DNA of 64,000 bases, taken from NCBI GenBank assembly GCA_033442325.1, contig JAWQFM010000006.1, positions 2,025,386 through 2,089,385 of the forward strand, written 5' to 3'. The position numbers and the translations under genes were made by a program. The stretch's first letter is position 1. Every line of letters starts with the position of its first letter. Under the pieces are notes generated by a model. That model made no database searches, was not told the origin of the DNA, and was given only the letters and a program-made list of their open reading frames with translations. This document shows, in pieces, positions 128 through 22,641 of the stretch. Source of the stretch: Salpingoeca rosetta. Its lineage: Eukaryota > Protista > Choanoflagellata.

Positions 128-310
128 TGTGTGTGGTGGGCTGGTCATTGACTCCCTCAGTAGTAAAACGGGTTTACTGAGTGCTTGCGCAAGAGAACGA
201 GTGTGTCAAACGCTTAATGGTTCGCAAAGAGAAATCCGGCGTCTTGGGCAGGTGTCTTGTTGGTGTTGATCCGGGGTGAAGCCAAAATGGCTTCTCAGGT
301 GGAGTCCACA
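128..310 (-). ncRNA. Candidate Fanzor omegaRNA (scaffold ~308-148 plus ~20-nt guide 147-128)
   Basis: Overlaps the last ~45 codons of the Fanzor ORF. Hairpins at 294-278 (GAAGCCA/TGGCTTC) and 181-156 (CTCAGTA/TACTGAG, containing the stop codon). The second hairpin is followed directly by GGAGTCAA (155-148), whose GGAGTC can pair with GACTCC at 306-301. Boundaries are inferred. Confidence 0.5.
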
Positions 311-2637
311 AGCCAAGGGGCAAATCGTGTCTCAGGCCGAGACCGATAAGCCCGATGGCGGTGGCTCCAACGACGTCGCGGTCTCGCGCGACGCCGCATG
401 CCGGGCAACGCGTCAAACGCGTTGCCGAGGAGTATTGTCCTTGCACACCGCAGCAGTAGGTGTACTTGCTGCTGCGGTACTCGCTGGTAGTCTGTGTGTG
501 ATTGTGTGTGAGTGTGTGTGCGTGTGAGGTAGTGCATGCACCGACTAACCCTATAATTCACATGGAGACACATCCATACTCTCTCTCACACTCTCTCTCC
601 TCACCTGAACGTCGAGCAGCTTGCTGATGTGTTTGCGAAGTTGTCCCGTTGGGCCGTGCAGACCTGCTCCTCGAGTTCTGAAGCCGTTGCTGTGTGTGAG
701 TGAGTGTGTGAGTGAGTGAGTGAGTGGGTGTGTGGGTGTGTGTGTGAAACAAAGAAAACAACAACGTACCTTGCCGCGTCGCCCCAAAAAACCTTGGCGC
801 CGGGGAATGTTTTAGCGACTCGCAACGCAAACGCGCGCAAGTCCCGCCGCCGTGCCAAAAAGCCATGGAGCAGTTGTTTCCTGTGCCGTCTTGTGAACTT
901 GGTCCGAGTATGCTGGCGGTGTGCCAGCTCCTCAATCGTATGGGGATGTCGTATGGGTCTCTGCTGCTCCACGCCTTGCTGCGCTGCTTGCCATGCTTCC
1001 TTGTGTGCCTGCCTTTTCTCCCGTCGCGCCTTTTTCTGCTTCGACGAGAGAAGGCGACAGTGGAGGAAGTTTGCCCAGCGCTGTTGCCTGTAGCGCAGAA
1101 CCCGCCCCGTCTGTACGCAAGCCAGTGTCACTGGGACGCGTACGCCGGGATCGCACCCAACCACGGTTGGTTGGGCAGTCCTCTGACGCAAGCGACACTT
1201 GCGACGGCGACGGCGACGGCGACGACGGGATCTTGTGCGTCGCTGGCTCTTGGTCAACTTGTCCTTGCTGGCATTCTGATCCGCAACGACCTTGCCACCA
1301 TTCTTGTTCTTGGCAGCCCCCTTCGGCTTCTCCTCTACCTGCAGGCAGACGTGTGCTGCGACTCCGTCCGTTACGAAGGACGTCGCTTCCTTGAGCCGCT
1401 CGTGGTCTCGAGGGCGCCTTGGGCTGAAGAAGTCATCAAGGCGAGACCCATCGCCTTGACGGGGTTGTATCTTGAGGAGGCGCAGCGTGGATTTGGAGAA
1501 GCGCAGGTGTCTTGTGCCTCGAAACAGGGGAAGGAGCGGTGGGTGCTTGTAACGGATGTGGCTGTGCAGCAGGAAGACAAGGAGACAAGGTGCATGTGAG
1601 TGTGTGAGATAGTAGTTGACATGAGCGACGAGCAGTGCACATGGACACATGCATCAGACACACCTGTACTGCCGCAGTGCCTGGTTGACTGCAAACACAA
1701 AGCCCAGGCGCTCCTCATTTGTCTTGCAATCTGTGAGCAGGTCTCGCAGCTCAGCGTACTCAAGATCATCCTCAACTGAGTCCTTCTCTTGGTCCTCCTG
1801 GTCCTCCTGCTCTTGCTCCTTTGCTTTCTGCCGCACATACCTGAAAGTACGCAGCCAGCGTGCTGGGGCGTGCCTGATGTGGAGTTTCAGGGCTCCTTGA
1901 AGCGTTCGGCAGGTCATGTCAAGGAGGTTGTGTGCGATGGCCTTGATCTGTGGTGGCGTGTTGACTGGGGTGGTGGCGTTTGGCATTGTGCGGCTGACGC
2001 CGCGAAGGGCCGATGTCTGCCGCGTGAAGGCTGTTGTGGAGACCTTGAGGGCCTCCCATAGGCCTGGTGCTTGGTACGGCTGCTTTTTAGCGCGGACAGC
2101 GCGGCGAGGCTGCTTCTTGGAGCATGTTGTGTGGCGAGGACGCTTCTGAGGACGAACAGCGCGCCGAGGCTGCTTCGTGGGAGGAGGCTGAAGCTCACGT
2201 GCCAGCACGCGCTGGGCCTCTCTTGTACTGACATCGTGGGCTGGCACCTTCTTCTTGCAGATGACAGCGAGCAGCGTATCAACGTCCTCTGGCCCAAAGC
2301 CATCGACCTGCGGGATGGCTGACGACTTGCCTTGACCAGGCCCCTTCCTTCGCCGCCGCCGGCGGCGCTTCCTTTTTCGTTTGCGCTTCTTCTCACTCTT
2401 CTCCTTCTCCTTCTCCTTCTTCTTCTTCTCCTCCTCCTCTTTTCGCTTCTTGATTCGCTCTTGGAGCTCGCTCTTCATATCCACTCCCTCTGTGCTCTGT
2501 AGCAGCTGCTCCAGCACCTTATCACTCGCCTTGCAGACGAGGTCGCTCACCCACTCCACGTGCTCCACACATTCCGCCACACGTGGGTCAAGGCCCAGGC
2601 TGGCAAAGGTCCGTGTCGCAGAGACAAACTTCTTCAT
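174..2637 (-). CDS. Fanzor (TnpB-like RNA-guided RuvC endonuclease), probably Fanzor1-type; 4 exons 2637-1664, 1561-770, 689-605, 491-174; ~722 aa
   Basis: Three GT-AG introns join the pieces in frame (974+792+85+318=2169 nt). The spliced protein has RuvC-I VVGCDPGVRVPVT (Asp codon 1152-1150), then VFWGDAASNGFRTRGAGLHGPTGQLRKHISKLLDVQTTSEYRSSK (Glu codon 482-480, in the Fanzor 'vdEyrTSk' position), Cys finger YCCG...RCPACG and RuvC-III RDRDVVGATAI (Asp codon 377-375). It also has LLPLFRGTRHLRFS and N-terminal MKKFVSATRT...VSDLVCKAS, which resemble Fanzor1 N-terminal regions. Confidence 0.9.
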
Positions 2638-2914: not shown

Positions 2915-2940
2915 CACCACACACTCTTCTTTTGAAAAAT

Positions 2941-2989
2941 TATGAAGGCGACATGGCGCACGCATGGCGTGCGCCATTTCGCCTTCATA
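2941..2989. other. 23-bp-stem inverted repeat/hairpin upstream of Fanzor
   Basis: tatgaaggcga-c-atggcgcacgc [atg] gcgtgcgccat-t-tcgccttcata: 22 of 23 positions pair, 3-nt loop. Confidence 0.9.
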
Positions 2990-4280
2990 TCCGCACCTGC
3001 GGCCACATATGGGCCAAAATGTGCCGTGCGGCAATAATGTGCCACATTGTGATGGGAGGTGGGTAAAGCTCATGTGTGTGGGAGCAGCAGCATCATCCCC
3101 TCGTGTGTGTGTGTGCATGTGGTGCACTCGCTCCTCAGCTTCCTCTGCACGGTTCACGCAGTCCTTGCACTTCTCTCTTTCTCTCTCTGTCTACACACAC
3201 ACGGATACACGGACACACACAGATACACACACACGGACACACACACAGATACACACGGACACACACGTGCACACACACACACACATGCGCACACACACAC
3301 ACACACGGATACACGGATACACGGACACGCACAGATACACACAGGCACGCTCCCCCCGCCCTCTCCCCCTCTCTCGCTGTTGCTCGTGCGTACACCTTTC
3401 TTTGCCGGCTGCTTAGACTATACTTACGCCACCGACGTCTTTGCACCCCCGACCTGCTTGGACGTCAGCCATGAAGCACTGATGCTGATGGCTCGAATAA
3501 CAGGCCCGTGTGTCCTCAAACGAACGCCAATCCCATGCGCCACGTGAACAGCGGCACTGCCCTTCCAAACAGAACGGCACCCCTCACCCGCTTGTGCAAC
3601 AAACGGGTCACCTTCTCCTCCCTCCCCGTCAGCTCTCTGCCTTGGCATGTGCGTTGCTCGTGGATGGTAAGATGGTGGGTGTCACCTGCGTTCCATCCAC
3701 TGCGCCGTGCTGNNNNNNNNNNNNNNNNNNNNNNNNNNNNNNNNNNNNNNNNNNNNNNNNNNNNNNNNNNNNNNNNNNNNNNNNNNNNNNNNNNNNNNNN
3801 NNNNNNNNNNNNNNNNNNNNNNNNNNNNNNNNNNNNNNNNNNNNNNNNNNNNNNNNNNNNNNNNNNNNNNNNNNNNNNNNNNNNNNNNNNNNNNNNNNNN
3901 NNNNNNNNNNNNNNNNNNNNNNNNNNNNNNNNNNNNNNNNNNNNNNNNNNNNNNNNNNNNNNNNNNNNNNNNNNNNNNNNNNNNNNNNNNNNNNNNNNNN
4001 NNNNNNNNNNNNNNNNNNNNNNGCGCACACAAACATAACGCACAACATCTTTTTTCTTCTTTTTTCTCTCCTTCCTCCCATAACAACACACATCAATTTT
4101 TATTACGCCACCACCAGCACCCGGCTTTCTTTGATTTCGTGCGCGTCGAGGAGACGCTGCACCATCTAGTAGTCTACAACTACGCCGGAATAATCACCTA
4201 GGCGGCAGCAGACCCACGACGGTGCTCCGATCATTTCCCACCAGAAGAGTTCTTCGAACAACATGCGCGGTGTGTGTGTG

Positions 4281-17859: not shown

Positions 17860-19697
17860 TCATACGGTAACCTGCCGTTGTCTGCGCCCGACAACGTAAC
17901 CGCCCCTGCGCGCCTGCCTGCCTGCACCGTTGCCATTGCCGTTTGCGTGCGCGGTTGTGACAGCGGCCATGTGCTGACTGTACTCCGTGCTGCCGTGGTA
18001 CGACTCGTTGAGCCCGCCGCCCTCAGACTCGTCCATGGCCTGCAGCAGCATGGACGCGCCCTCACGGCTGCTGAGCCGGGCCAGGTGCTCAGCAAGCTTC
18101 TCCATCTCTGCGCGGTCCTCGCCAAACACCTCGGGGTGGCCCGAGCGCGCGACGAGGAGCTCAAACTCGAGGTCGCGGATGGAGCGGCGCAGCGTGTCGT
18201 GGTCCTCCTGCAGCTTCATCACATAGTCCCGCGTCTCCTGCAGCAGCACCCGGTCCGCCACATTCCGGTCGTGCGCAATCGACGGCGTCACCTGCTGGCA
18301 GCGCAGGAAGCACTGGCGCAGGTTCTTGCGCCGGCTCCGCTCGCGCTCTGTGTTTATGCGTATTTTTGTTGTGGGGGAGGGGGTTGTGAGTGAGGTGGTG
18401 AGGCGATAGGGGAGAGAGGGAGATGCGTGTATGTATGTATGTGAAACAAGGACGCAGTTCGACAGACAGAGAGAAACGCGGTCGCACGCAAACACACGCA
18501 CACGCACACATGTACACGCACACATGTACACGCACACACACCACACACACACACACACACCACACACACGCATACATTCACACACACATATACACATACA
18601 CAGCACACACACACACACCCACACCCACACACACACGTACCACACATGCACACACATTCCCCCCCCCCCCAACAACACAAGCACACGTGACACGGGCTGT
18701 GGCTCTTACCGTTGTGGCAGACGCGGCGGGAGCGCGGGTGGGTGCCGTCGTCGTCGTCGTCGTCATCATCGTCGCCGGCGTTGTCCTCGTCGCTGCCAGA
18801 GTCTGGCTGCACGGGCTCCTCCACTTTGCTCTTGGACCGGCTGCCGCGCGGCCTGGAGCCGTTTCGCGAGCTGCGGCGCGCCCGCGGCGTCCCTGCCTTT
18901 GTCGGCGTCACCTCCATCGCGCCCGGGCTCGGGGCGTACATGGGCACCTGCAACGTGTGTGCGCGCGGACGGCCCATGGCCCCATCGCCAACCACCGCCT
19001 CGTCCTTTGGGTGCTGCTGCTCGTGTGAGAGCTTGGAGCGCGTGCGCACGCCGCCGTTGGTAGCCGTGGGGTGGGGCCCGGGGCTGCTGGCCGTGGTGGT
19101 GACGGCGATGGTGGTGGCCGGGCTCATCGACAGGTCGTGCAGGTGCTGCGAGATGTGGTCCGCGGTGATTGGCGACGCGGTGGCGCGGGTGGTTGCCTTG
19201 AGGTATGCCTTGGTCTGGTCGCGGCGCAGCGGTACGCCCTTGGGCGCAATGGGCAGGCTCGATGCCCGCGCCCGCGACAGGCTGCCGGCCCGCCGGCGGG
19301 TGCTCGTCGTCATTGCATCGCCTTCTTCAAGCAGTTGTGTGGCTATGGGGGTCTTGCTGCGCGCCTGTTGGCTGTTGGTTACAGCGTCATGTCCGTTGCC
19401 GTTGCCGTCGGCATGTCCATTCGCATGCGCATTCGCATGGCCATTTGCGTGGCCATTTGCGTGGCCATTTGCATGCTGTTGCTGGGCGAACAGCTGTTGT
19501 TGTTGCTGCTGGTAGGCGGCTGGGGCCTGAAATGCACCGGGCACGAGCTGCTGGTTGTGAAACTGCTGCTGTGGGGCGGCGGCCTGCTTGAAGGGCTGAA
19601 ACTGGGAGGAGGCAGAGTGCACGCCGCCGTTGGGGACGTTGGGGACTACGCCTCGGTGTTGGGTGGCAACGGCATCTTGACTGCTCTCAGCAGACAT
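17860..19697 (-). CDS. bHLH-leucine zipper transcription factor of the Myc/Max network (Mxd/Mnt-like); exons 19697-18710, 18347-17860
   Basis: A GT-AG splice gives RRVCHNERERSRRKNLRQCFLRCQQVTP...DRVLLQETRDYVMKLQEDHDTLRRSIRDL, i.e. an H-E-R basic region, HLH and zipper. Confidence 0.8.
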
Positions 19698-20130
19698 GGC
19701 ACAACAACGCCTGCAGAGAGGGAGGCAGGGAGGGGGGAGGAAGACGAGAGGTGTGTTGTGGTGTTGGGGCGAGGAGGTGGTGTTTGGGCGAGGTGGTGAG
19801 CAAAAGTGTTGGCAAAGTCAGTGCAAATGCAATGTGTCGACAAATGAGACATGGAGCAGTCAGAGAGGAGGAGGAGGAGGACGGAACATGACACTCTATC
19901 CACTCGGGGTGGGGGGGGGGTTGCTAACCGATGCATGTGTGTCGCCGACACACAGGTGAACAACAGAAAACAATGAACAGAGCAAACCAGAAAGAACAAA
20001 AGGGCAAGCAGCCAGCAGGAAAGAGAGAGGAGGGGGGGGGGGAGGCGGACACAAGACACGTGGTCGCGTACGCCCATGTGTGTGGCTGAACAAACACACT
20101 CAGGCAGACAGACAGACAGACAGACAGGCA

Positions 20131-20200
<70 letters not shown>

Positions 20201-22641
20201 GTGTACCTGTGTTGTGAAGGGGGGGGGGTTGTTGAGAAGGGTCACTCAGGCACGCTTGTGGCTTGCTGTGTCGAACGTTGTGGTCAAACGCGTGCGAAGA
20301 GGCTGGGAAAGGCAGCAACGAAAAGGGTGCAGCTGAGGTTGTCGTGTTCGGGATGCGTGAGGTGAAGAGGCACGTGGCAAGGTCCGGGTGGTTTGTTTGC
20401 TTGCTCGCGCTCACAACAACAAAGCCAACAAAAAAAATTCAAAGCCCACAAGCGACTATGAAAGTCATGAACAGGGTAGATGGGATGCACAAGACCATGC
20501 ATGGGAACGCGTTTGAACCAGTGTGTGTGGTTGTTTGGGGGGGGGGGGATTGGGGACGGACAGAACGGGGGGAGGACAATGTGGTGTGTGGGTGTGCGGG
20601 TGTGGTGGAATGTGAGTCGATGGTGGTTCTTGTTGAGGGAGCACATGGCACAACGGCACAGGCACAACGGCACAGTCATAGCACGTGCATCTGCATCGAC
20701 CCACAGACACACACACAGGCACAGAAACAGACAGACACACACACACACACACAGACACACAGACACAGACACACACAAACACAAACAAACACACTCGACA
20801 AACACACTCGACAAACACACTCGACAAACACACTCGACAAACACAAACAAACAAGCCACAAAGACAACCACACCCACCCACCCACAAACATACTTGTCGA
20901 TAGGGGGTGATGTGCTTGCAGGCAGGCAGATTTGCTGAGCTGGAGCGTGTGTTGTGGTGTGCTGCGGGAATTGAGCAAGGCAGGGGCAAGAAACACGAAG
21001 AGACCAAATAAACAACACAAACAGCAGCGGTCGACATGCGTGAGTTTGGTTCGACAGGACAAGCCAGGCACGTGATGATGGCTGAAGATGACTAACAAAG
21101 CAAGCAAACAAGCAAGAATGCGTGTCACATCGGCAAACAGGCAAGCACACCGGCACGCACATGGTCAGCGAAGATGGAGCGAGAAAAAAAGAAACAACAC
21201 AGGCACCCACAAAAAGTGTTTGTTCCCCGTCTTTACTCGCACCTGCTTGGGAAAGGACCGTTGGACACGTGTGTGTGTATGTGTCGCGCTGTGAAGTGTG
21301 TGCGATGTTAATGTGTTGATGTGCTGGGGTGAGTGCATGGGAAATCACGAACGAACGAACGAACCAAACAAACACGAGCAAGCAAGAAGGCAAGTCAAAG
21401 ATAGCAAGCATGCGTGAGCGCGACAAACAACAAACAAACCAAAACAAAGGGAAGGAAGGAGGACGTGAACAAACAGAGCAAGCAAAAGCGCTGAGCACAA
21501 TCAGCGTCATGACAGGGGAAACCAGTTGCCCGCTCGCTCACCAAGGACAAAAAACAAAAGTGAAGGAGTTCCTGCGTGGGTATGTAGCGGGGGGGGGAGG
21601 AAGAAGGAGAGAGGAAGGAGAGGAAGGAGAGGGCGAAACAACTGTTTGTTTGCTCGTCGTGGGGGTGTGTGTATGTGCGTGTGTGGAGAGCGCGTGCATG
21701 TGTGTGGCATGTGGTTGTGTTTATGTGCGCGCCACGCACACATGCACACGCACACACACAAGGCCACAGCGAAAGCCAAGCATCCAAACAAAACACAAAC
21801 ACGAGGCAACGACGCAAGCAAGCAAGGCAACGTGGGCGTGTGTGTGTGGAGGAGGAGGCGGGGCAGCAGCAACAAGCAAACAAAACGAGCATGACGAAGA
21901 AGGACATTGCTCACGCACCACGCGGGGCAAAAAAACGGTTTGCCAGGACAGCCGAAACCTAGATCAAAACGAACGATCCACCACCACGTGTTGTTCTTGT
22001 TGCTGCTGCGCTTGCTCGTGCTTGTTGGCCTAATGCGCATACAGGGCGACTTGAAAAGTTCATTTTGCAACGCGTGGGTGGTTGGGTGCGGGAAGTGCAA
22101 CCAAGTCGGTTGGGTGGTGCAATTTGCAACGACCTACACGAAGGAACATGAAAAAAAATAACTGGTGTGACCAAATTGATTCCATGCTTTTTTATGTTAG
22201 TTGTTGACTTTTTTGTTTTGCGTTCGGGGGAGCACTTTTCATGATGTTGAGAGCACTGTTTTGCCGCGGCGCCGGACGAGGTTTGTTGATGGTGGTGGTG
22301 TTCGTGTGCTGCTCGTCATGGTTGCTGCCTGTTGCCTTGTTGGCGATGATGCGTGGTGATGATGATGGTGATGATGACGCCAACACAGACACGCTAGGTC
22401 TCACGGTACTGCCGTGGTGCTGCTGCTGTGCACACATCTGTTGTGTCTGCGTGCAGGGCATTTTTTGCAGCGCAGCTTGGCTCGGACAACAACGACAGCT
22501 CTGCCACGGCGACCACGACCACATCAACTTCAGCACACCGCAGCTTTCTTCGCCACAAGCACACACACAAACGCAAACGCAAAGTCAAACGCAAAGTCAA
22601 ACACAGACGCAGACACACCACCAGCACCAGCACCAGCAGAC

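What the first reader, a model, noticed from the sequence alone, without database searches (positions are those of the whole stretch)
128..310. Candidate omegaRNA overlapping the Fanzor C-terminal codons, with a predicted guide
Seen (minus strand): GGACTCC at 307-301; a 7-bp hairpin at 294-278; a possible TTGCG/CGCAA plus GAAC/GTTC stem at ~227-186; a terminal hairpin at 181-156 that contains the stop codon; then GGAGTCAA, which is complementary to the upstream GACTCC. Established: TnpB/Fanzor omegaRNAs overlap or follow the ORF 3' end, often close with a pseudoknot, and take their guide from DNA flanking the element; IS200/IS605 right ends often finish in TCAA. Inference: a ~160-nt scaffold with a guide starting UGACCAGCCCACCACACACA. 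The protein tail after RuvC-III may be shaped by RNA structure rather than protein function.
Basis: partly seen in the sequence, partly recalled or inferred. Interest (0 to 1): 0.85.

Follow-up and report, generated by a model that had tools for sequence, protein, structure and literature searches.

The report
Misplaced omegaRNA call beside Salpingoeca Fanzor
A far stronger candidate scaffold lies just upstream (484-278), inside the last coding exon of this known Salpingoeca rosetta Fanzor gene.

Summary
The window gene is Salpingoeca rosetta PTSG_11622. It is a four-exon Fanzor/TnpB-like gene, and this species was already listed as carrying Fanzor2 (Bao & Jurka 2013).

Three results count against the proposed scaffold:
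- It has no excess structure: 128-310 gives z -1.0 and 148-277 gives z +0.6.
- GGACUCC has a better partner upstream.
- The proposed guide runs into a (CA)n microsatellite.

The only readable paralog (contig C28) loses all similarity at 278, not at TCAA 148.

Positions 484-278 on the sense strand form five stem-loops:
- The fold is -89.8 kcal/mol for 440-278 (z -7.9).
- None of 1000 synonymous recodings of the same peptide fold as well.
- C28 keeps the fold (z -3.3), with two compensatory double changes in one stem.

Three boundaries coincide at about 278: the end of the RNA structure, the end of paralog homology, and the end of the structurally alignable TnpB core (aa 688-691).

My best reading (about 0.5) is a TnpB-style scaffold embedded in the ORF, ending at about 278, with the guide starting near 277. 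The 34-codon tail would be read-through.

The scan's notes list omegaRNA candidates at other Fanzor loci of this genome; I did not check them.

The parts
174..2637 (-). Four-exon Fanzor/TnpB-like gene (S. rosetta PTSG_11622, 722 aa). Exons: 2637-1664, 1561-770, 689-605, 491-174.
   Evidence: The spliced translation is identical to P0002. P0002 is XP_004998100 / PTSG_11622. Pfam PF07282 scores 27.3-27.9 bits against a cut-off of 26.3.
443..484 (-). SL-0: a 14-bp stem-loop with a 12-nt loop, at the start of the last exon.
   Evidence: The core stem arms (479-470 / 456-447) are identical in C28; the two substitutions near the top lie in the loop region.
404..426 (-). SL-A: a perfect 10-bp stem GGCAACGCGU/ACGCGUUGCC with a 3-nt loop, in the zinc-ribbon codons.
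   Evidence: In C28 all three loop bases differ, and one stem pair is broken.
370..397 (-). SL-B: an 11-bp stem with a 6-nt loop, across the RuvC-III RDRD codons.
   Evidence: Comparing C6 with C28 there are two compensatory G-C to A-U double changes, one C-G to U-G change, and no broken pair, although the changes are non-synonymous.
300..369 (-). SL-C: a long imperfect stem-loop of 26 bp. Its base pairs GGAGCC(AC) 368-361 with (GUG)GACUCC 309-301.
   Evidence: It is poorly kept in C28, where 9 pairs are broken.
278..294 (-). It is the last stem of the structured domain, and paralog homology ends at its 3' edge.
   Evidence: C28 refolds a 6-bp hairpin here in a shifted register.
257..277 (-). 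Candidate guide under the revised model (starts ACCCCGGAUCAACACC...). The boundary is uncertain by about 12 nt, because a TCAA sits at 269-266.
   Evidence: This is inference from the boundary at 278. The 22-mer 277-256 is unique in the genome.
174..277 (-). 34-codon C-terminal tail plus the stop codon. It has no excess RNA structure and no paralog homology, and lies outside the TnpB core.
   Evidence: GC3 is 0.56 in the tail against 0.67 in the rest of the gene; the difference is not significant.
156..181 (-). It is real as sequence, but its significance is not established.
128..155 (-).
   Evidence: There is no support from copies or from folding.

Best explanation
The flagged interval is mostly the unstructured, lineage-specific 3' tail of a known S. 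rosetta Fanzor gene, not an omegaRNA scaffold. The real RNA-structure signal lies just upstream. About 205 nt of the sense strand of the last exon (484-278) form five stem-loops (SL-0, A, B, C, D). They lie over the zinc-ribbon and RuvC-III codons.

I read this as a TnpB-style omegaRNA scaffold embedded in the 3' end of the conserved ORF, either active or a relic. The old element's right end would sit at about 278 (possibly up to 266), and the guide would be the DNA that follows, from about 277. The annotated ORF would then simply read through the old right end for 34 more codons.

What is shown: the structure, its excess over both shuffles and synonymous recodings, its retention in the paralog, and the coincidence of three boundaries at about 278. 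What is inferred: that the structure acts as RNA, that the protein binds it, and that the next roughly 20 nt serve as a guide.
For: Structure:
- 278-440 minus strand folds at -89.8 kcal/mol against -57.5 +/- 4.1 for shuffles (z -7.94, 0 of 200 as good).
- 255-500 gives z -7.77.
- Across the gene the only comparable peak is the hairpin upstream of the start codon. About 1% of windows in the whole 64 kb reach z -5 or lower.
- There are four perfect hairpins of 7 bp or more within 156-426, against a background of 0.59 per kb.

Not explained by the protein sequence:
- The native fold is -89.8 kcal/mol. Permuting synonymous codons gives -60.6 +/- 4.0, and resampling codons gives -62.5 +/- 5.1. None of 500 did as well in either test.

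Paralog:
- The homologous 168 nt of C28 fold with z -3.33.
- SL-B has two compensatory double changes and one wobble change, with no broken pair.
- C28 similarity ends at 278/279, and nothing downstream matches.

Protein boundary:
- ESM Atlas structural matches to TnpB/Fanzor-like clusters stop at aa 688-691, which corresponds to window ~278-267, starting at the ~278 boundary.

Precedent:
- TnpB omegaRNAs overlap the 3' end of the ORF, and Fanzor GtFz1 overlaps by 17 aa (PMC10432273).
- The ApmFz2 scaffold is 205 nt and consists mostly of long stem-loops (PMC11832414).
Against: - The runs guessed to be RNA hold intron words, so they are DNA or unspliced.
- Only two readable copies exist, and C28 is a decayed, 5'-truncated fragment. 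Its end at 278 could be a rearrangement breakpoint at a palindrome.
- SL-C is not kept in C28 (9 broken pairs).
- The plus strand folds almost as well (z -7.1), so DNA-level palindromes are not excluded.
- Characterised Fanzor guide RNAs mostly lie downstream of the ORF (PMC10530073). A scaffold wholly inside an exon, with the ORF reading through the guide, has no precedent that I found.
- The gene carries host-type introns. Its only near-identical copy is part of a segmental duplication of more than 9 kb, so the element looks immobile.
- No pseudoknot partner was found for the nucleotides before the proposed guide.
- The other Fanzor loci of this genome show no such structural peak.
Confidence: 0.5

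Rival explanations
1. One reading: a scaffold of about 160 nt at 310-148, closed by GGACUCC/GGAGUC pairing, with the element ending in TCAA at 148 and the guide at 147-128.
For: The listed stems and the 6-bp long-range complement exist and appear in the MFE of 128-310. Characterised Fanzor guide RNAs usually lie after the conserved ORF end (PMC10530073). The TnpB core ends at about 278, so 277-148 is the place where such an RNA would usually lie.
Against: - z is -1.0 for 128-310 and +0.6 for 148-277.
- C28 shares nothing after 278.
- GGACUCC is used by the far more stable SL-C.
- The guide would be mostly a CA repeat.
- TCAA also occurs at 269-266, so the motif carries little weight.
Confidence: 0.06
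2. Extended model: the scaffold starts in the structured exon domain (484-278) but continues through the loosely folded 277-148, ending at the terminal hairpin and TCAA. The C28 copy would then be truncated at 278.
For: 148-440 still gives z -5.9. Its MFE and centroid keep the 181-156 hairpin, and pair a downstream GGGAG (156-152) with CUCC upstream. In ApmFNuc, structure conservation extends from the 3' non-coding RNA up into the ORF.
Against: All the excess stability comes from 278-440. A 130-nt unstructured insert is unlike known scaffolds. The model also needs the C28 break to fall by accident exactly at the end of SL-D and of the protein core.
Confidence: 0.1
3. The stem-loops act as something other than a guide RNA. 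They could be single-strand DNA hairpins serving as subterminal transposition signals, or an mRNA structure affecting translation or stability.
For: Both strands fold equally well. A second strong hairpin peak sits upstream of the gene at about 2940-2990, which recalls hairpins at both ends of an element.
Against: Four G-U pairs in the sense-strand stems (two each in SL-0 and SL-B), and a C-G to U-G change in SL-B of C28, fit RNA (or single-stranded DNA) of the sense strand better than the opposite strand. No transposase is annotated in the 10 kb upstream shown; that neighbour is an EDRF1-like host gene, and the downstream flank reads N. This reading also does not exclude an omegaRNA role, since in IS200/IS605 the two overlap.
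Confidence: 0.2
4. The structure has no function. It would be palindromes left by mutation, such as template switching, in a GC-rich exon.
For: About 1% of 160-nt windows in this 64 kb reach z -5 or lower. SL-C has decayed in C28.
Against: Five consecutive stems sit exactly over the last 70 conserved codons. The fold stands 5-7 sd below synonymous recodings. There are compensatory changes in SL-B.
Confidence: 0.12

Closest known systems
TnpB omegaRNA (reRNA) of IS200/IS605 and IS607 elements, for example ISDra2
   Same: A structured scaffold on the sense strand overlaps the 3' end of the nuclease ORF and ends at the element's right end. The guide is the flanking DNA (general knowledge; the overlap is noted in PMC10432273).
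   Different: Here the whole candidate scaffold lies inside a spliced eukaryotic last exon, and the ORF has no stop before the putative right end. No TnpA, TAM or RNA data are available, and no pseudoknot was found.
Fanzor2 omegaRNA/fRNA of Acanthamoeba polyphaga mimivirus (ApmFz2/ApmFNuc)
   Same: The scaffold is of similar size, 205 nt, and is mostly long stem-loops (PMC11832414). Structure conservation reaches into the ORF (PMC10530073). The S. rosetta Fanzors were classed as Fanzor2 (PMC3627910).
   Different: The ApmFz2 RNA lies about 200 nt past the ORF end, up to an inverted repeat, and is closed by a pseudoknot. Here nothing structured or conserved lies past the conserved ORF end.
Fanzor1 omegaRNAs (SpuFz1, GtFz1, CrFNuc-1)
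   Same: Fanzor genes can carry introns, and their guide RNAs derive from the 3' UTR or right end. GtFz1 overlaps the ORF by 17 aa.
   Different: Those loci are multi-copy with clear terminal repeats and conserved 3' non-coding RNA. This locus is effectively single-copy and has no recognisable ends.

Membership tests
   z is -1.01 for 128-310 and +0.60 for 148-277.
   C28 homology ends at 278/279. Only microsatellite matches are found downstream.
omegaRNA (revised interval 484-278) | A stably structured scaffold on the sense strand at the 3' end of the nuclease ORF. | tested here: met
   z is -7.94 and -7.77. None of 1000 synonymous recodings fold as well.
omegaRNA (revised interval 484-278) | The structure is kept across copies with compensatory changes, and conservation stops where the guide begins. 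| tested here: inconclusive
   Only two copies are readable. SL-B has two compensatory changes and none broken, but SL-C has 9 broken pairs. The C28 fold gives z -3.3. The break at 278 fits the model, but C28 is a decayed fragment. A covariance model found no further copies.
omegaRNA (either interval) | The RNA is expressed as a discrete small RNA and is bound by the nuclease. | not testable with these tools
The candidate RNA runs hold intron words.
omegaRNA (either interval) | A pseudoknot or closing helix lies next to the guide (TnpB and Fanzor2). | tested here: inconclusive
   GGAGUC 155-150 is complementary to GACUCC 306-301 over 6 bp, but it competes with SL-C. No partner was found for the nucleotides before position 277.
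Fanzor/TnpB nuclease | A TNB zinc-ribbon domain together with the D ... [TS][TS] ... C4 ... RD motif. | tested here: met
   PF07282 scores 27.3-27.9 bits against a cut-off of 26.3. GCDPG, SSK..CC..CPAC and RDRD can be read in P0002. Atlas structural matches to TnpB-like clusters reach TM 0.55-0.66. Bao & Jurka list this species with 2 Fanzor2 families.
IS200/IS605 element with a TCAA right end | A Y1 TnpA, subterminal hairpins, and a right end cleaved after a fixed tetranucleotide. | not tested
   TCAA occurs at both 151-148 and 269-266, so it has no discriminating power. I did not search for a TnpA. The upstream neighbour is an EDRF1-like host gene.

The most novel reading that the evidence does not exclude
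A host-resident, intron-bearing Fanzor whose complete guide-RNA scaffold is encoded inside its own last exon. The same roughly 205 nt would specify the zinc-ribbon/RuvC-III residues and also five RNA stems. The ORF would have no stop inside the element and would read through the guide into flanking DNA. The mRNA would therefore have to be either translated or cut into guide RNA. This would be in a choanoflagellate used as a model for animal origins.
Probability: 0.3. Interest if true: 0.6.

Novelty: new member of a known kind. Interest (0 to 1): 0.4.

Why it matters
Fanzor guide RNAs are usually sought downstream of the ORF. At this locus that rule points to an interval with no signal, while the coding exon carries one of the strongest structure signals in the 64 kb. 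If the embedded scaffold is real, three things follow:
- It would give a concrete RNA and guide position to test for a native RNA-guided nuclease in S. rosetta, a genetically tractable relative of animals.
- It would be a clear case of codon choice being constrained by an overlapping guide RNA.
- It would be a warning that omegaRNA prediction in eukaryotes should scan the last exon and not only the 3' UTR.

Tried and rejected
- **RNA reads.** The look-up of sequencing runs gave no usable RNA evidence, because X1 and X2 hold 0.75 of the words spanning intron 1.
- **C15 copy.** It is 93-99% identical to the window, but it is part of a segmental duplication that extends more than 9 kb upstream. 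It carries a frameshift, and its last exon lies in a 965-N assembly gap. It therefore says nothing about the 3' boundary.
- **DNA to the left of window position 1.** It reads N in both assemblies.
- **Relatives elsewhere.** HMMER with exon 2 against 1.8 billion representative proteins found only the S. rosetta cluster. The viral and metagenome contig scans found nothing.
- **Known RNA families and literature.** Rfam gave no relevant hit. The held supplements of the Fanzor papers do not mention Salpingoeca, and no paper mentions the gene ids.
- **More copies in the genome.** A covariance model built from C6 and C28 found no additional or 'ghost' copies.
- **Other Fanzor loci of this genome** (C2, and the C14/C29 pair). 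None shows a structure peak, so they give no independent support.
- **GC3 of the tail against the rest of the gene.** The difference is not significant, p = 0.2.
- **Inverted-repeat search for terminal repeats.** The output was swamped by CA/GT microsatellites.

Full report
**What the locus is.**
The minus strand of window 174-2637 carries a four-exon gene with exons 2637-1664, 1561-770, 689-605 and 491-174. Its spliced translation is identical to P0002. P0002 is the 722-aa hypothetical protein PTSG_11622 (XP_004998100) of Salpingoeca rosetta ATCC 50818.

The last exon scores above Pfam's cut-off for the Cas12f1-like TNB zinc ribbon, PF07282 (27.9 bits against 26.3). The sequence also shows the GCDPG, SSK..CC..CPAC and RDRD motifs of TnpB/Fanzor. 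Atlas structural matches to TnpB/Fanzor-like clusters cover aa 452 to 688-691.

Bao & Jurka (2013, PMC3627910) already list Salpingoeca sp. ATCC 50818 with two Fanzor2 families. I did not check that this gene belongs to one of the two, but a Fanzor in this species is not new. I found no description of its guide RNA.

**Checking the observation.**
- GGACUCC at 307-301.
- The 7-bp hairpin at 294-278.
- UUGCG/CGCAA and GAAC/GUUC between 227 and 185.
- The 7-bp hairpin at 181-156, with the TAA stop (176-174) in its 5' arm.
- GGAGUCAA at 155-148.

As an ensemble they are not above chance. For 128-310, z is -1.01, and 32 of 200 dinucleotide shuffles fold as well. For 148-277, z is +0.60.

Perfect hairpins of 7 bp or more occur at 0.59 per kb in this window, and only 1.3% of 183-nt windows hold two. 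The proposed guide ends in (CA)4 and runs into a CA microsatellite at 135-89. TCAA also occurs at 269-266.

**What the copies say.**
The genome (55 Mb) holds three loci of this family.
- **C15** is 93-99% identical. It is part of a segmental duplication that extends more than 9 kb upstream through the EDRF1-like neighbour. It has a frameshift (P0001 = PTSG_06033), and its last exon lies in a 965-N gap. It gives no information on the 3' boundary.
- **C28** is a decayed, 5'-truncated fragment covering aa 471-686, with in-frame stops and a frameshift. It is about 80% identical over window 1126-771 and 522-279.
- C28 then diverges completely. Only microsatellite matches are found in 3.3 kb downstream.

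Conservation ends at 278/279, the 3' edge of the 294-278 hairpin.

**What is really there.**
Scanning the gene for excess folding energy gives two strong peaks (z about -7 to -8) and one weaker one. The strong peaks are the hairpin upstream of the start codon (about 2940-2990) and the interval 251-500. A weaker peak lies at 951-1100 (z about -5). The flagged 148-277 is flat.

For 278-440 the sense strand folds at -89.8 kcal/mol against -57.5 +/- 4.1 for shuffles (z -7.94). For 255-500, z is -7.77.

The fold is five consecutive stem-loops:

| Stem-loop | Window | Base pairs |
|---|---|---|
| SL-0 | 484-443 | 14 |
| SL-A | 426-404 | 10, perfect |
| SL-B | 397-370 | 11 |
| SL-C | 369-300 | 26 |
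| SL-D | 294-278 | 7 |

These stems lie over the zinc-ribbon and RuvC-III codons.

The structure is not a by-product of the protein sequence. Across 500 permutations of synonymous codons and 500 resamplings by the gene's own codon usage, none folded as well. The means were -60.6 +/- 4.0 and -62.5 +/- 5.1 kcal/mol. In the whole 64 kb, about 1% of 160-nt windows reach z -5 or lower.

**Conservation of the structure.**
The homologous 168 nt of C28 still fold with z -3.33. Stem by stem:
- SL-B differs at five stem positions. These amount to two G-C to A-U double changes and one C-G to U-G change. No pair is lost, although the changes alter amino acids.
- SL-0's core stem arms are unchanged, with both substitutions near the top in the loop region.
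- SL-A changes all three loop bases and breaks one pair.
- SL-D refolds in a shifted register.
- SL-C loses 9 pairs.

With only two sequences, one of them a pseudogene fragment, this is suggestive but not proof.

**Three boundaries coincide.**
The end of the structured domain is at 278. The end of paralog homology is at 278/279. The structurally alignable TnpB core ends at aa 688-691, and codon 688 is window 278-276. The 34 codons after that point (277-177) have no homolog, no excess structure and no structural match. They look like read-through into DNA that was once flank.

**Best explanation and its limits.**
I read 484-278 as a TnpB-style omegaRNA scaffold embedded in the 3' end of the conserved ORF. 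The old right end would be at about 278 (up to 266 if GAUCAA belongs to it), and the guide would start at about 277. The 22-mer 277-256 is unique in the genome.

Precedents:
- TnpB omegaRNAs overlap the ORF, and GtFz1 overlaps by 17 aa.
- The ApmFz2 scaffold is 205 nt of mostly long stem-loops.

Points against:
- Characterised Fanzor RNAs mostly lie after the ORF.
- The plus strand folds nearly as well (z -7.1), so DNA-level hairpins are possible.
- No pseudoknot partner was found.
- The gene looks immobile: it has host-type introns, it is effectively single-copy, and no further copies were found by a covariance model.
- The other Fanzor loci of this genome show no such peak.
- No RNA evidence could be obtained.

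From then on I kept those places out of all searches and scripts. The runs guessed to be RNA hold intron-1 words, so they are DNA or unspliced. DNA to the left of window position 1 reads N.

**Verdict.**
It is wrong in placement, in the end motif and in the guide.

My confidence that 484-278 is, or was, the scaffold is about 0.5.

If real, this is a new member of a known kind. Its unusual feature is that the scaffold lies wholly inside an exon. Interest is moderate.

Noticed in passing
window 2940-2990 (both strands): A near-perfect long hairpin (ATGAAGGCGAAATGGCGCACGC / GCGTGCGCCATGTCGCCTTCAT) lies about 300 nt upstream of the start codon. It gives z -6 to -8 in the structure scan. Together with the 3' structured domain it brackets the gene. 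It is shared with the C15 duplicate only as part of the larger duplication.
   Followed up: partly
window 756 to beyond 9000, and C15:1068683-1077000 (L024, L027, L030): A segmental duplication (93-99% identity) carries the Fanzor gene together with its EDRF1-like upstream neighbour. The C15 Fanzor copy (PTSG_06033) has a frameshift after aa 527, and the assembly breaks in exon 3.
   Followed up: partly
G000:C28:768352-769015 (L002, L025): A 5'-truncated, decayed fragment of the same Fanzor family. It lacks RuvC-I and exon 3 and has in-frame stops. It lies about 550 nt upstream of what may be the start (an ATG) of another gene, not checked, on the same strand.
   Followed up: partly
G000:C14:437439-437645 and C29:224083-224289 (L047, L048); C2:2276572-2278272 (L023): Three further TNB-domain (Fanzor-like) loci exist in the genome. 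C14 and C29 are a near-identical pair with a canonical CDEAWTSKTCGRCG...RDANAARNIL motif. C2 is a single short copy. None shows an RNA structure peak in or after the ORF.
   Followed up: partly
window 951-1100, minus strand: A second, weaker structure peak inside exon 2, with z about -4 to -5. I have no explanation for it.
   Followed up: no
window about 18400-22400 and 29041: Several other 160-nt windows reached z -4.6 to -6 in the coarse minus-strand structure scan. I did not examine them.
   Followed up: no
window 1 and L029:12638: The window starts exactly where the older assembly (GL832956.1) has a gap or withheld stretch. The true downstream context of the gene's 3' end is therefore unknown.
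   Followed up: no
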